Assembly: GCA_033442325.1 (NCBI GenBank)
Contig: JAWQFM010000002.1
Span: 2,320,615-2,384,614, forward strand
Direction: 5' to 3'
Source of the DNA: Salpingoeca rosetta
Lineage: Eukaryota > Protista > Choanoflagellata
DNA: 64,000 nt
In this document: positions 39,475 through 45,381 of the stretch, piece after piece
Layout: the number at the start of each line of letters is the position of its first letter
Position numbering within the stretch: position 1 is the first letter of the stretch
Position numbers and translations under genes: made by a program
Notes under the pieces: model-generated
What the model was told of the DNA's origin: nothing
Seen by the model: the letters and a program-made list of their open reading frames with translations, nothing else
The model's database searches: none

Positions 39475-41383
39475 CCACCACCACCACCACTGGCAGCAGT
39501 GGTGACGGTGGTGATGCAGTCGCCAAGGCAGAGGAGGCCGATGAGGAGAAGAAGGAGAAGACGAAGGAGGAGGAGAAGCAGACGAAGCAAGAGGAACAGC
39601 AGCAGGTGCGTGAGGGCGGCGATACCAGCGCAACAGCGGGTGATTCCAGCGAGCACGAGTTTGTGTTTTCGCCGCAGGGCCTGTACCCCAAGCCCGTGCA
39701 CGCGCTGGGTGAGCGCGAGGGGTACATCTTTGAGCTGTTTGGCGCGTTTGTGGCCAAGGCCATGCAGGACAACCGCCCGCTTGACCTGAACCTGAGCCCG
39801 GCGTTTTACGGGTGGATGGTTGGCGCGCCGCCGTGCACGCTCGCAGACGTGCGGGATGTGGACGAGGGCCTGTACAAGTCGCTGGTGAAGCTGCAAGCAG
39901 CGGCTGATGCGAAGAAGGCCGTGGACAATGACACCTCCCTCGACGCAGCGGCGCGCGCAGAAAAGCTTGCCGCCATCACGGTGGACGGGTGCCCTGTTGA
40001 GGACCTGTGCTTGGACTTTACGCTGCCGGGCCACCCTGACGTGTCGCTTGGTCAGGCCGGTGCAGACACGCCTGTGACGCTGGAGAACCTCGGCGAGTAT
40101 GTGGCCGCTGTTGTTGATTTTACGCTCCTGCGCGGCGTGCGGGATGCAATGACCAGCTTCACAGCCGGCTTTGCCGCCGTGTTTGACATGCGCACCCTCA
40201 CCCTCTTCACCGTCGAGGAGGTGCGTCTTGTTTGTGGGGACGCGAGAAGGGGGGGGGGGAGTGACAGTGAGAGGGGAGGGCAGTGAGAGGGGAGGGCAGA
40301 GGTTTGCTGGTAATGTGTTTGGATGTATGTGTGTGTATGTGTGTGTGTCGATGCATGTTTGTGCATGGTTGTGACCGTGTGTAATTGTGTGTGCGTGTGT
40401 GTATATGTGCGAGTATGTGTGTGATTCAGTGTGCTTGTTTCTGGATGTGCGCTCTTTGAACCGGCTGCTCACGGTTTGGCTTGGTGCATGTGGTGGTGTT
40501 GGTTTGCGCGTGCACAGGTTCGCACCGTTGTGTGCGGTTCTCGCGTGGAATCGTGGGACTACGATGGTGAGCAGCCATGATCTCGTGGTCACCACCTGTG
40601 ATGTGATGTGCATGCAGCGGTGTTGTTGCGGAGGGCTGTTCAGGCAGAGTTCATTGCCACGCTTTACATCTCATCACCCCCTCCCCTTTGCTCATCCCCA
40701 CTTGTGTTTCGATTGCCTCCCTCTGCCCCCCCCCCCTCCCCAAACACGGCATGTTTTGTTGTCAGAGCTGCGCGCGTGCATCAAGGCCGAGCACGGGTAC
40801 GATTCATCGTCGCCGCAGGTGCAGCAGCTGCTGGAGGTCCTGGTGGAGCTTGATGTCGACAACAAGCGGAAGTTTGTGCAGTTTCTCACGGGCTCGCCAA
40901 ACCTTCCTGTCGGAGGTGCGGTTTGCGGTGTGGTGTGGTGTGTGTGTGGGGGGGGGGGTTGTGTTCGTGGTGTGATCATGGATTTGTGATGTGGCGTGCT
41001 TGTGGTGGGGTGTGCGTTTGGCTGTCTTGGCTGGTCTTTATGCTGTGGATTTTTCCTGCCTGCCATTCGTCTGCATGATGCGAGGTGATGTGACTTGTAA
41101 TTTTGATCAGTGCACTGTGATTTCTGCCACAACGTTTCCCTCACCGCCCCCCCCCCTTCTTCTTCCTCCCCGCTTTTTCGGTGCATCAGGCTTCAAGGCG
41201 CTCAAGCCGCCGTTTACCGTTGTGATGAAGGACGCGCAGGGCCTGTCCCCAGACCAGGTGCTCCCCTCTGTCATGACGTGCCAAAACTACTTCAAGATGC
41301 CCACGTACAGCAGCAAGGACGTGTTGCGCGAGAAGCTCCTCATGGCCATCACCGAAGGACAGGGCAGCTTTGACCTCTCTTGA
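30970..41383 (+). CDS. TRIP12: TRIP12/UFD4-like HECT E3 ubiquitin ligase with ARM region and WWE domain
   Basis: Proposed start MESSG|SSNPKKRAK. S/R/K-rich N-terminus, ARM-like exons (..IDFFMGASQKDAI..), WWE (VWEWRSGASTWRPY..IERAY..VDVQRMRQIN..REVRR, ~35433-35625), FRRKGVLHRV, and HECT motifs FVGEVGTGIGPTLEYY, DLCLDFTLPG, HGY, FVQFLTGSPNLPVGG, LPSVMTCQNYFKMPTYSS..EGQGSFDLS*. Confidence 0.94.
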
Positions 41384-41812: not shown

Positions 41813-42000
41813 TCAGTCCGCGATGGCGAGAACGCCAAGCGTGATGTAGCGCTGTGCAGTGATGCGTGGGTTGGCGCCGGGCAGGTCAGCCACCTTCATC
41901 ACCGTGTTGACGGGAATCTCTTGCATCTGCTTTGCCAGCGTCCAATCCTCGTCCGAAAACTGCATCACCCACCTGCGCGGGGTTGGGCGAAACAGGGCAT

Positions 42001-42084
<84 letters not shown>

Positions 42085-42278
42085 NNNNNNNNNNNNNNNN
42101 NNNNNNNNNNNNNNNNNNNNNNNNNNNNNNNNNNNNNNNNNNNNNNNNNNNNNNNNNNNNNNNNNNNNNNNNNNNNNNNNNNNNATTATCGGGGAAATCT
42201 TACGACACAATCCAAGAGTGGGTCAAGTCCCATTGTTCCCACAGTCGAGACTTGCAATCAAACATACATACAAGCAAA

Positions 42279-42339
<61 letters not shown>

Positions 42340-43450
42340 GCGCAAAGAGCCAGGACTGACTTCCTGTTGATGCCGAGGATGCGCGGGACAAGGGAACCGG
42401 GCTCATCAACGAGGTCCTCGAGGGCGCAGATGAAGACGCCGCGACGCCGGAACACGCGCGTCTCGCCCGTCAGCGTCACCAGTCGGCCAATCGAGCCCAT
42501 GTCTGCAGAGGGAGATGCATGTGTTGTGTGTGTGTGTGAGAGTGTCATGTTGTGCTTCGCGTGGTGGCTGTCGCGCACAGTTGAAACGCACACACTGACA
42601 CGCACTCACTTACACACACACGCACACACACACTGACACATTGACACACACCATACAAGACACAAGACACTCACACATAGATCAAGACCAAAACCCAGGT
42701 CCATCCGCCCACACCACACCTGGCATGGCCTTGAGATGACCGCCGCAGTTCATCATGACTGGCAGCTTCAGCCCGTGCACGAGGCCCTGATCACTGCGCA
42801 GGCGACGGAACGCCTGCTTGGTGGCACCACACATGCCGCGGGGCGCGCAGTACTCTTGCAGCTGGTCGATCGCCGACTGCCAGCGTGGGCGGATGGCATC
42901 GACCACCTCCGTGGGGATGCGTGCGTTGTCGTCCAGACCTGTCGGCAGGGATTCGCGCATGATCCTGAGCGTCGAGGATGACTCGTACGTGTGCTGCGAC
43001 AGCTGTTGATTGCATCAGGTGTGAGTGAGTGTGTGTGAGTGTGAGTGAGTGAGTGAGTGTGTGTGAGTGTGAGTGAGTGGGTGGGTGAGTGTGTGAGTGA
43101 GTGAGTAAGTGAGTGAGTGAGTGAGTGAGTGAGTGAGTGAGTGAGTGAGTGAGTGAGTGAGTGAGTGTGTGAGTGAGTGAGTGAGTGAGTGAGTGAGTGA
43201 GTGAGTGAGTGTGTGTGTGTGTGTGTGTGTGTGTTCGCGCGAAGACACAATGGAAGTGAGAGGCGAGCACAGTTATGATGTATGTGCGGCGCAGGCATGT
43301 GGACGCAGGCAAACACTGTCACGTACGGAGCTTGCAGTGGCGGCGCTGAGAGTGTTGTGTGTTTGAAAGGTCATGAGGGCCTGAATGATGACGTTCACAA
43401 ACGTAAAACCGTTGTCGTCGAGCGAGACGGTCAAGTGCAACGAGTGCTCA

Positions 43451-43507
<57 letters not shown>

Positions 43508-45381
43508 TTCAGAGTGGGTGGTCAACAAACGCGCAAATCAGGAAGCAATGAGGAGTGCTGCACGTGTGCAAATATGCTGCGGGCCAAGCGAATATTGGAA
43601 GAGAGGCCATACCAGATGTTTCGGCAGCGTGGATGACGCCTGTGTTGCAGATGGGGCGAGCAGACGATCCGTGGTGAGCAATACTTAATCATGCCACGAA
43701 CACTGTCGCATAATGCAGATATCACCCACACACACACACACACACACACCACCACACACACACACACACCACAGGTGAACACAGTGCTTGTAGGTGTACA
43801 AGCGTACCGCGGGGCACAATGAGGGTGTCGCCTGCGTGCAGCGTAAAGTTGAACTCTTGCAGTCCGACAAGTTCCTCCTCCTTGAAGAAGCGTGTCAGCC
43901 GCTGTGACGCAGCCTCTTGCTTGTGGTACCAGGGGAACGACCGCTCTTCCGGTGGCGTGAACAGCCGCCAGTGCTTCTTGCCTTCAAGCTGTTTGAAAGT
44001 GTGTGTACAGACGCGTATGGGCGTGTGTTTGGCACTTGTCAGCAAGTGAGGTACGATGTCCATCGTACAACCAGGTAGGCAGGGAGGCAGGCAGTTCGAT
44101 ACACACACACAGACACAGACACCGACACAGACACACACACACACACAGACACACACACACACACACACAGACACACACACACACACACACACAGACACAG
44201 ACACACACGCACGCACGCATGGAGGGGACCTGGAGGATGATGACGGCATGAACATCTTGGTGGAAGATGAAGCCGCGAGACTGGGCCGGGGTCAGATAGA
44301 TGTTGGTGGCAGAGAACAGACTTGTCTCCTGTCAGGTGCAGCAAAAGGACCAAAGCAAGCAAGCAAGTGGAAAGGTTTGGATCAGCGTGAGTGAAGAAGC
44401 GCTGACGGAACGGACAAGCGATGAAGACCACAAGAAGAGCACCTGGAGTAGTTCAGCCCAGATGTCACAACGACAACACCGGTGACTGGATGCACTGCAT
44501 TGTCAACAACGCGACACACCAATGCGGGTGTGCACTGACCCTCTCCAAAGCCCACGAGAGCGCCCAGATGTGTTCGTCGCGCGTGTGGACTGCGGTCATG
44601 ACGGCGGTGCTGCCATTGCGGGCAATGGAGTCCAGCACATCGCCGAGCTGGACGGGCTCGTCGTTGGCGAAGACCTGATTGAAGGAAGAAGATGGTGGGA
44701 GTTAGGGTCGGTGAATGGAAGGAAGGGCAAAGGCATCAACATCGCCTTGTATGGTCAGTGAGACGACCACAAGCAATCGGATACAAGCACATGGATACAA
44801 GCACACGTGCGCGTTCAAGCAAGAGCATGCAAGTACACTCGCATGCACTCACACACACACGCTCACACACTCACACATTCGCACACATACGCACACGCAA
44901 ACGCACACATATACATATACACAAACACTCGCACATACATACACACACGTGTGCATGACCCAGCATCAGCACTGACGGTGTCGCCGTTGCGGACGAGGTT
45001 GAAGCCGGCCTCATACTTGTGGCGATAAAAGGTAAGGAACCGGAAGAAGTCTGATGAGGTGAAGAGCTGGCCATAGTAGTTGGGGTCATCGCGGGCAATG
45101 TGCAGCGGTCTCCTGCCCTCCACAATCAGGTCTGTGATCTCCTGGAATCGGTGCGGCCACACGATGCGCTCTCCCGTTGCCAGGCAGTGGCAGTCTGGAT
45201 CTTCCTCGTCGTTGCTGATGCGCGTGCACTTGCTCGGCCGCATGTACATGTGCATGTCATCGTGAACCGCCCGCAAGTGCAGTGGGCAGTCAATCTCCGA
45301 AGGCAGCGCAGTGCTCCAGCCACAAAGCACAGCCAGCACTCCTACAACAACAGCGACCAGAGTCGCAGCAATCCCCTTCAT
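41813..45381 (-). CDS. RIOX/NO66/MINA53-type JmjC (cupin) 2OG-Fe(II) oxygenase with N-terminal signal peptide
   Basis: Spliced product: MKGIAATLVAVVVGVLAVLCGWSTA-LPSE..RPLHIARDDPNYYGQLFTSSDF..|..TNIYLTPAQSRGFIFHQDVHAVIILQ|LEGKKHWRLF..TLHAGDTLIVPRG|VIHAAETS|DEHSLHLTVS..MRESLP..|..MKVADLPG..AQRYITLGVLAIAD*. The HxD..H triad and the 2OG-binding Lys are present. One intron contains an N gap. Confidence 0.88.
42085..42184. other. Assembly gap (100 N)
   Basis: N run next to a (GT)n tract. Confidence 1.

What the first reader, a model, noticed from the sequence alone, without database searches (positions are those of the whole stretch)
41813..45381. Ribosomal-oxygenase (NO66/MINA53/YcfD-type) enzyme apparently re-routed into the secretory pathway
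Seen: a classical cleavable signal peptide (MKGIAATLVAVVVGVLAVLCGWSTA/LP) and a short 4-Cys segment lie in the same exon and frame as the RIOX N-terminal motif (PLHIARDDPNYYGQLFTSSDF). Downstream come NIYLTP..HQD..LQLEGKKHW..PRGVIHAA..SLHLTVS and a C-terminal VADLPG..LGVL segment reminiscent of the RIOX winged-helix. Established: characterised RIOX enzymes are nuclear/nucleolar or bacterial cytosolic His/Arg hydroxylases of ribosomal proteins. Inference: an enzyme hydroxylating His, Arg or other residues on luminal or extracellular substrates.
Basis: partly seen in the sequence, partly recalled or inferred. Interest (0 to 1): 0.75.

Follow-up and report, generated by a model that had tools for sequence, protein, structure and literature searches.

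The report
Signal-peptide-bearing RIOX-type oxygenase gene
A choanoflagellate (Salpingoeca rosetta) gene encodes a complete NO66/MINA53-type iron/2-oxoglutarate hydroxylase that begins with a signal peptide, so an enzyme type known from the nucleolus probably works in the secretory pathway or outside the cell; related receptor-like genes were predicted by computer in 2010, and none has been tested.

Summary
Window 41813-45381 (minus strand) is a 9-exon, all GT-AG gene. Its 518-aa product is identical to the database protein PTSG_01480 of Salpingoeca rosetta. The N gap (42085-42184) lies inside intron 8. The splice phases fit across it, and the orthologue aligns without a break over that junction.

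Residues 1-25 form a signal-peptide-like N-terminus. Residues 26-89 carry four cysteines. Residues ~67-518 fold as a full three-domain ribosomal oxygenase (VIA Z 29 to NO66, 27.6 to MINA53), with H203/D205/H277/K218 intact.

Relatives in S. infusionum (a complete transcript ORF), in an AT-rich unidentified eukaryote with the same intron positions, and in a metagenome also start with signal peptides. The genome also holds separate RIOX1-like and RIOX2-like genes. The quick tree places this clade outside RIOX1+RIOX2. It is not a JMJD8-type JmjC-only protein.

The novelty is limited. Iyer et al. 2010 (PMC2938197) predicted extracellular MINA/NO66-clade JmjC domains in receptor-like Monosiga proteins. 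S. rosetta has 13 or more further PF08007 loci, and seven of the nine examined have signal-peptide-like upstream ORFs. Earlier notes of this scan had flagged that family on other DNA of this genome. This gene is the stand-alone, full-architecture form.

The parts
41813..45381 (-). Whole coding region of PTSG_01480 from start codon to stop codon: 9 exons, 518 aa
   Evidence: Splice model; identical to P0001
44977..45381 (-). Exon 1 (res 1-135): signal peptide, 4-Cys segment and the start of the RIOX core
   Evidence: conserved at 49% identity with the same exon end in orthologue L020
45307..45381 (-). Signal-peptide-like N-terminus, res 1-25 (MK + 19 hydrophobic residues + S-T-A, likely cut before L26)
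   Evidence: 19-residue Kyte-Doolittle window of 2.57, the only hydrophobic segment in the protein; also present in P0121, P0123, P0124 and P0147
45115..45306 (-). Clade-specific N-terminal segment, res 26-89, with C32, C52, C64 and C66
   Evidence: all four Cys are conserved in P0123/L020; the AF2 model has low confidence at 23-65
44540..44674 (-). Exon 2 (res 136-180)
   Evidence: 60% identity to L020 with the same borders
44230..44328 (-). Exon 3 (res 181-213), holding the Fe(II) ligands H203 (44262-44260) and D205 (44256-44254)
43808..43988 (-). Exon 4 (res 214-274), holding the 2OG-binding K218 (43976-43974)
43613..43639 (-). Exon 5, a 27-nt micro-exon holding the distal Fe(II) ligand H277 (43631-43629)
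43327..43451 (-). Exon 6 (res 283-324): end of the JmjC barrel and start of the helical domain
42720..43002 (-). Exon 7 (res 325-419): helical (dimerisation-type) domain with C376, C382 and C410
42361..42502 (-). Exon 8 (res 419-466) with C444
41973..42360 (-). Intron 8, which contains the assembly gap at 42085-42184
   Evidence: the orthologue is continuous across the junction
41813..41972 (-). Exon 9 (res 466-518 plus stop): C-terminal winged-helix-like part
   Evidence: structural alignment to NO66 reaches residue 518

Best explanation
The gene encodes a stand-alone Fe(II)/2-oxoglutarate oxygenase of the ribosomal-oxygenase (MINA53/NO66/YcfD, Pfam PF08007) fold. It has the JmjC barrel, the helical dimerisation-type domain and the C-terminal winged-helix-like domain. 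Its N-terminal signal peptide inserts it co-translationally into the ER. The catalytic domain therefore sits in the lumen of the secretory pathway, or outside the cell, because there is no KDEL-type end and no second membrane span. By analogy with its solved relatives, it most likely hydroxylates a side chain (His or Arg C-3 type chemistry) on secreted, surface or matrix proteins. It would use luminal Fe(II), 2OG and O2, as the collagen hydroxylases and AspH do. Shown here: the gene structure, the fold, the intact catalytic residues, the conserved hydrophobic N-terminus, and cysteines that are specific to the clade. Inferred: cleavage of the signal peptide, compartment, catalytic activity and substrate.
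For: The gene model is identical to PTSG_01480. PF08007 scores 72.3 bits against a cut-off of 22. phmmer gives MINA53 1.8e-17 and NO66 5e-16, with alignment starting at residue 90. The AF2 model has pLDDT 76.7. VIA gives Z 29.1 to NO66 over model 31-518, 27.6 to MINA53 and 18.8 to YcfD, but only about 14 for JmjC-only enzymes. H203, D205, K218 and H277 are invariant in 105/106 aligned relatives. The N-terminus is the protein's only hydrophobic segment, and S and A sit at -3 and -1 before L26. RIOX1 and RIOX2 lack any such segment. The closest relatives found among 1.84 billion representatives also begin with signal peptides: S. infusionum P0121 (a complete transcript ORF), P0123/L020, and P0124. 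L020 shares the intron positions and all four N-terminal Cys. The 8 Cys of the mature protein lie in columns that are gaps in other family members. Separate RIOX1-like and RIOX2-like genes exist in the same genome. In the quick tree the clade sits outside RIOX1+RIOX2.
Against: The hydrophobic core is 19 residues long, which is long for a cleaved signal and compatible with an uncleaved anchor. No retention signal, substrate or partner is known. The Cys-rich segment is modelled with low confidence. The dimer prediction gave no verdict. The in-frame region upstream of the ATG has no stop for about 630 nt, but it runs through microsatellites and the neighbour's first exon.
Confidence: 0.7

Rival explanations
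1. The same enzyme, but the N-terminal segment is an uncleaved type II signal anchor. The protein would then be a single-pass membrane protein of the ER, Golgi or cell surface, with a 2-3 residue cytosolic stub and a luminal or external catalytic domain.
For: The hydrophobic run I4-W22 is 19 residues long with a mean Kyte-Doolittle value of 2.57. The only charge before it is K2. The AF2 model draws residues 2-19 as one helix.
Against: The relatives have shorter, classical h-regions of 9-13 residues, followed by Pro/Gly and small residues at -3 and -1: P0123 ..PTTTNA/A, P0124 ..LVVA/H, P0121 ..AIALPG. S-T-A before L26 fits the -3/-1 rule.
Confidence: 0.2
2. The signal peptide is an annotation artefact. 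Translation would start at a downstream Met (M43, M45 or M47) or from an unseen upstream exon, and the enzyme would be cytosolic or nuclear like other RIOX proteins.
For: There is no RNA evidence for the 5' end. The start codons of this gene and of its head-to-head neighbour are only about 106 bp apart.
Against: Residues 1-47 are conserved as protein in L020, including C32 and the hydrophobic start. The S. infusionum transcript ORF, called complete and preceded by 94 nt of leader, also starts with a signal peptide. The nuclear-type functions are already covered by RIOX1-like and RIOX2-like genes.
Confidence: 0.05
3. The protein is secretory but is not a protein hydroxylase. It could oxidise a small molecule or a glycan, or act mainly as a binding or sensor protein.
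For: Bacterial MINA/NO66-like genes occur in peptide and secondary-metabolite clusters, and a redox-sensor role was proposed for the Monosiga receptor-like forms (PMC2938197). The closest sequence scores outside the clade include many apparently bacterial proteins of about 400 aa.
Against: Every characterised three-domain ROX enzyme hydroxylates a protein side chain (PMC6182338). All catalytic residues are kept.
Confidence: 0.1

Closest known systems
RIOX1/NO66 and RIOX2/MINA53 (eukaryotic ribosomal histidyl hydroxylases)
   Same: It shares PF08007, the HxD..H triad plus Lys, and the three-domain JmjC / helical / winged-helix architecture. These are the best sequence and structure matches.
   Different: It has a signal peptide and a 4-Cys segment where RIOX1 and RIOX2 have a charged nucleolar-type N-terminus. 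It has eight clade-specific Cys. It gives no Pfam hit to the WHD_RIOX1 or WHD_ROXA models. It lies outside the RIOX1+RIOX2 clade, and the genome has its own RIOX1-like and RIOX2-like genes.
Extracellular MINA/NO66-clade JmjC domains of receptor-like choanoflagellate proteins (Iyer, Abhiman, de Souza, Aravind 2010, PMC2938197)
   Same: Both are choanoflagellate proteins with a signal peptide followed by a MINA/NO66-clade JmjC domain, and both are predicted to modify surface or matrix proteins. S. rosetta has 13 or more further PF08007 loci; seven of the nine examined have a signal-peptide-like ORF upstream on the same strand. An AU test does not reject a common clade.
   Different: This gene is stand-alone at 518 aa. 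It has no receptor ectodomain, transmembrane span or kinase/SH2 part. It keeps the full ROX C-terminal domains. It shares only about 30% identity over 125 residues with a paralogue, and it is separate from the paralogues in the free tree.
JMJD8 (ER-luminal JmjC-only protein; PMC5684140)
   Same: Both have a signal peptide in front of a JmjC domain.
   Different: JMJD8 is a JmjC-only protein of the Cupin_8 type. Here Cupin_8 scores below its cut-off while PF08007 scores 72 bits. The fold also carries the ROX helical and WH domains. No JMJD8 sequence was on hand for a joint tree.
YcfD/RoxA and bacterial MINA/NO66-like cupins
   Same: The same three-domain fold (Z 18-19). The C-terminal V-x-DLPG motif is shared with some relatives of about 400 aa, such as P0126.
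   Different: Those proteins are cytosolic and have no signal peptide. E. coli YcfD is an arginyl hydroxylase of Rpl16 (PMC6182338).
Luminal 2OG oxygenases of other folds (collagen prolyl and lysyl hydroxylases, AspH)
   Same: The proposed mode of action is the same: hydroxylation of secretory proteins in the ER lumen.
   Different: These are unrelated subfamilies of the 2OG oxygenase superfamily. The resemblance is in function only and is inferred.

Membership tests
Ribosomal oxygenase (ROX) structural family: MINA53/NO66/YcfD, Pfam PF08007 | PF08007 JmjC_2 match above the gathering score | tested here: met
   72.3 bits against a cut-off of 22, residues 172-294. Exons 3 and 4 each match adjoining parts of the profile.
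Ribosomal oxygenase (ROX) structural family: MINA53/NO66/YcfD, Pfam PF08007 | HxD...H Fe(II) triad and a 2OG-binding Lys | tested here: met
   H203, D205, H277 and K218 align to MINA53 H179, D181, H240 and K194 (MINA53 numbers were counted from the printed alignment). They are invariant in 105/106 relatives.
Ribosomal oxygenase (ROX) structural family: MINA53/NO66/YcfD, Pfam PF08007 | JmjC domain followed by a helical dimerisation domain and a C-terminal winged-helix domain (PMC6182338) | tested here: met
   AF2 model. VIA Z 29.1, 380 residues, model 31-518 against NO66 182-636. This holds at the fold level only: there is no Pfam hit to PF21233 or PF20514, and residues 447-475 have low confidence.
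Ribosomal oxygenase (ROX) structural family: MINA53/NO66/YcfD, Pfam PF08007 | Homo-oligomerisation through the helical domain | tested here: inconclusive
   The homodimer job on residues 67-518 gave no verdict.
Ribosomal oxygenase (ROX) structural family: MINA53/NO66/YcfD, Pfam PF08007 | Hydroxylates a ribosomal protein in the nucleolus or cytosol | not testable with these tools
   The signal peptide argues against access to ribosomal proteins.
RIOX1 or RIOX2 orthologue group | Falls inside the RIOX1 or RIOX2 clade and is the genome's copy of it | tested here: not met
   It lies outside the starred RIOX1+RIOX2 clade in the quick tree. Separate RIOX1-like (L022) and RIOX2-like (L025) genes are present.
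JMJD8 (ER-luminal JmjC-only) | JmjC-only architecture of the Cupin_8 type | tested here: not met
   Cupin_8 scores 27.3 against a cut-off of 27.4, while PF08007 scores 72.3. The extra ROX domains are present. JMJD8 itself was not aligned.
Choanoflagellate extracellular MINA/NO66-type receptor-like proteins (PMC2938197) | Signal peptide plus a MINA/NO66-clade JmjC domain | tested here: met
Choanoflagellate extracellular MINA/NO66-type receptor-like proteins (PMC2938197) | Fusion to Cys-rich, Ig or other ectodomains, a membrane span and intracellular signalling domains | tested here: not met
   The protein is 518 aa, has no other Pfam domain and has no second hydrophobic segment.
Choanoflagellate extracellular MINA/NO66-type receptor-like proteins (PMC2938197) | Common descent with the S. 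rosetta paralogue expansion | tested here: inconclusive
   The two are separate in the free tree. The tree constrained to hold them together is not rejected and is slightly better (p-AU 0.64). Long branches are involved.

The most novel reading that the evidence does not exclude
PTSG_01480 and its relatives form a third, old eukaryotic ROX lineage dedicated to the secretory pathway. It would be the little-changed, stand-alone relative from which the choanoflagellate extracellular JmjC receptor expansion arose. It would introduce hydroxy-His or hydroxy-Arg into matrix or surface proteins, possibly co-regulated with the head-to-head neighbouring secretory oxygenase as a luminal hydroxylation module. 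If so, the ROX winged-helix domain is not a ribosome-targeting device.
Probability: 0.25. Interest if true: 0.7.

Novelty: new variant of a known kind. Interest (0 to 1): 0.5.

Why it matters
Every characterised three-domain ribosomal oxygenase acts on ribosomal proteins. Its winged-helix domain has been read as a sign of a conserved ribosome-related role (PMC6182338). A complete ROX enzyme behind a conserved signal peptide, in the closest living relatives of animals, would show that this chemistry, histidyl or arginyl C-3 hydroxylation, was also used on secreted or matrix proteins. S. rosetta can be transfected and edited, so the 2010 prediction of extracellular MINA/NO66-type enzymes could be tested on a small soluble protein rather than on large receptors.

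Tried and rejected
The 5' end and the splice junctions, including the one across the gap, have no RNA support here.
- Exon-wise searches of solved structures gave nothing useful.
- The spliced model that I built was never handed to a search tool as a joined sequence. It was joined only inside scripts, to check the frame and to compare it with the stored database protein P0001. After the exon-1 search found P0001, searches used exon references or P0001.
- The word search with P0001 and with the clade profile A3 found no new member of the signal-peptide clade. Only the exhaustive representative search did.
- Homodimer prediction on residues 67-518 gave no verdict. It counts neither for nor against dimerisation.
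- P0147 carries a signal peptide but does not group with the clade in the quick tree and sits on a long branch, so I do not count it as a secure member.
- Neighbour gene: Pfam on its larger open pieces was blank, and a PF13640 scan of the genome did not hit it.
- No SignalP-type predictor was on hand. Only hydropathy and the -3/-1 rule were applied.
- Mitochondrial targeting was rejected. The N-terminus is a long uncharged hydrophobic run, not an amphipathic Arg-rich presequence.
- A GPI anchor was rejected. The C-terminal hydrophobic stretch is a confident strand of the WH-like domain.
Full report
**What is there**

The window belongs to Salpingoeca rosetta. An exon-1 search returned the database protein P0001, "hypothetical protein PTSG_01480 [Salpingoeca rosetta]", at 100% identity. 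On the minus strand between 45381 and 41813 I built a nine-exon model from open frames and splice signals.

- The exons are 45381-44977, 44674-44540, 44328-44230, 43988-43808, 43639-43613, 43451-43327, 43002-42720, 42502-42361 and 41972-41813.
- All eight introns are GT..AG, and the phases are consistent throughout.
- The model gives 1557 nt, which is 518 aa plus TGA.
- The translation is identical to P0001.

It was joined only inside scripts, to check the frame and its identity with P0001. Later whole-protein searches used the stored protein P0001.

**The gap**

The 100 N at 42085-42184 lie inside intron 8 (42360-41973), next to a (GT)n run.

- Exon 8 ends with two bases of codon K466, and exon 9 supplies the third.
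- The S. infusionum relative reads "VNGKW" where S. rosetta reads "INRK|W", so the alignment is continuous across the junction.

A lost exon is therefore unlikely.

**Identity of the enzyme**

- Pfam: PF08007 (JmjC_2) scores 72.3 bits against a cut-off of 22. Cupin_8 scores just below its own cut-off.
- Sequence: the best solved relatives are MINA53 (1.8e-17) and NO66 (5e-16), aligned from residue 90.
- Structure: an AlphaFold2 model built on a 106-sequence alignment has mean pLDDT 76.7. It shows a confident JmjC barrel (about 70-300), a helical domain (300-408) and a C-terminal alpha/beta domain.
- Fold search: Foldseek ranks NO66 and MINA53 first over about 500 columns. VIA-align gives Z 29.1 to NO66 (380 residues; model 31-518 against chain 182-636), 27.6 to MINA53 and 18-19 to YcfD. 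JmjC-only enzymes such as JMJD5, FIH, JMJD7 and TYW5 reach only about 14, and only over residues 74-294.
- Catalytic residues: H203, D205, K218 and H277 are invariant in 105 of 106 aligned relatives.

The protein therefore meets the structural definition of a ribosomal oxygenase given in PMC6182338, which is a JmjC domain, a dimerisation helix domain and a winged helix. Dimerisation itself could not be judged, because the job gave no verdict.

**The N-terminus**

Residues 1-25 are MK, then 19 hydrophobic residues, then S-T-A. This is the only hydrophobic segment in the protein (19-residue Kyte-Doolittle window of 2.57). Vertebrate RIOX1 and RIOX2 have no such segment.

An exhaustive search of 1.84 billion representatives gave only three hits below 1e-30. 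The best full-length relatives, and one N-terminal fragment, all start with signal-peptide-like sequences.

- P0121 is from Salpingoeca infusionum, from a transcript ORF called complete (MLWKMVQRWLLVVTVVAIALPG...).
- P0123 is a 140-aa exon on contig L020 (..FVTATAISAILFLPTTTNA/AE..).
- P0124 is from a metagenome (MKFFLLAGLVVA/HES..).

L020 comes from an AT-rich (37% GC) unidentified eukaryote. It shares 49-71% identity exon by exon. Exons 1 and 2 end at the same residues as in S. rosetta, and all four N-terminal Cys are conserved. Conservation extends upstream of M43, M45 and M47, which argues against a downstream start.

The mature protein has eight Cys. They fall in alignment columns that are gaps in nearly all other family members. 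Four of them also line up with Cys in the S. infusionum protein. This fits an oxidising compartment.

There is no KDEL-type end and no second membrane span. The 19-residue core could also act as an uncleaved type II anchor. The shorter, classical signals of the relatives make cleavage more likely.

**Place in the family**

The genome also carries a RIOX1-like gene (L022, exons up to 80% identical to snake RIOX1) and a RIOX2-like gene (L025, up to 64% identical to opossum RIOX2). The first ORF of the RIOX2-like gene has no signal peptide.

In a quick maximum-likelihood tree of 53 proteins, PTSG_01480, P0121 and P0124 group together (SH-aLRT 83). They are sister (86) to a starred clade that holds RIOX1 and RIOX2. 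This support is moderate.

**Prior art and the wider family**

A PF08007 scan of the genome found 44 matches at more than 20 places. Many lie in large open frames. At seven of nine loci examined, an ORF with a signal-peptide-like start lies upstream on the same strand. In L007 the signal and the JmjC domain share one 709-aa ORF.

Earlier notes of this scan pointed to a 2010 prediction, which I then read. Iyer et al. (PMC2938197) state that all previously known eukaryotic MINA/No66 members are intracellular. [quoted passage not shown]

The RIOX evolution paper PMC6006756 mentions neither choanoflagellates nor signal peptides. No paper names PTSG_01480.

An AU test does not reject a single clade uniting PTSG_01480's group with the receptor-like paralogues. 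The constrained tree is 3.9 log-likelihood units better, with p-AU 0.64. Long branches are involved, so common descent stays open.

**Verdict**

This is a secretory-pathway version of a ribosomal-oxygenase-fold enzyme. It is not JMJD8-like, and it is not RIOX1 or RIOX2. It is new as a stand-alone form with the full ROX architecture, conserved in at least two choanoflagellates and in environmental eukaryotes. The general idea of extracellular MINA/NO66-type enzymes in choanoflagellates is 16 years old and still untested. Localisation, cleavage, activity and substrate are all inferred.

Noticed in passing
window 45487-49626 (+): A head-to-head neighbour gene has its first ORF starting about 106 bp from this gene's ATG. 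It has a signal-peptide-like N-terminus (MMMMNSRVG(n)[25 protein letters not shown]). My Pfam scan of its open pieces and a PF13640 genome scan did not confirm or refute this.
   Followed up: partly
window 40991-41383 (+): The C-terminal end of a HECT ubiquitin-ligase domain (PF00632, 60 bits), convergent with the 3' end of PTSG_01480.
   Followed up: partly
G000 loci L002-L008, L017, L018 (e.g. L007:397-2523:-): A large S. rosetta expansion of divergent PF08007 JmjC genes. Seven of nine loci examined have a signal-peptide-like start upstream on the same strand. These are probably the receptor-like extracellular MINA/NO66 family predicted for Monosiga in 2010.
   Followed up: partly
L022 (G000:C32:568500-575500) and L025 (G000:C29:520000-529000): Canonical multi-exon RIOX1-like and RIOX2-like genes of S. 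rosetta. The first ORF of the RIOX2-like gene lacks a signal peptide and is followed by a Lys-rich stretch.
   Followed up: partly
L020:764-2447 (+): An orthologue from an unidentified AT-rich eukaryote (Logan contig of SRR14727191). Exons 1 and 2 end at the same residues as in S. rosetta, and the N155 sequon (NGST) is conserved.
   Followed up: partly
window 41980-42084, 42280-42345, 43010-43232, 43450-43506, 43720-43775, 44100-44205, 44850-44945: Every intron of this gene carries long microsatellites, (GT/CA)n and (GAGT)n. The assembly gap abuts one of them.
   Followed up: no
P0147 / L019:347-1936: A 529-aa PF08007 protein with a signal peptide, from a compact, apparently intron-poor eukaryotic contig next to ELMO and WD40 genes. 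It does not group securely with the clade because of a long branch.
   Followed up: partly
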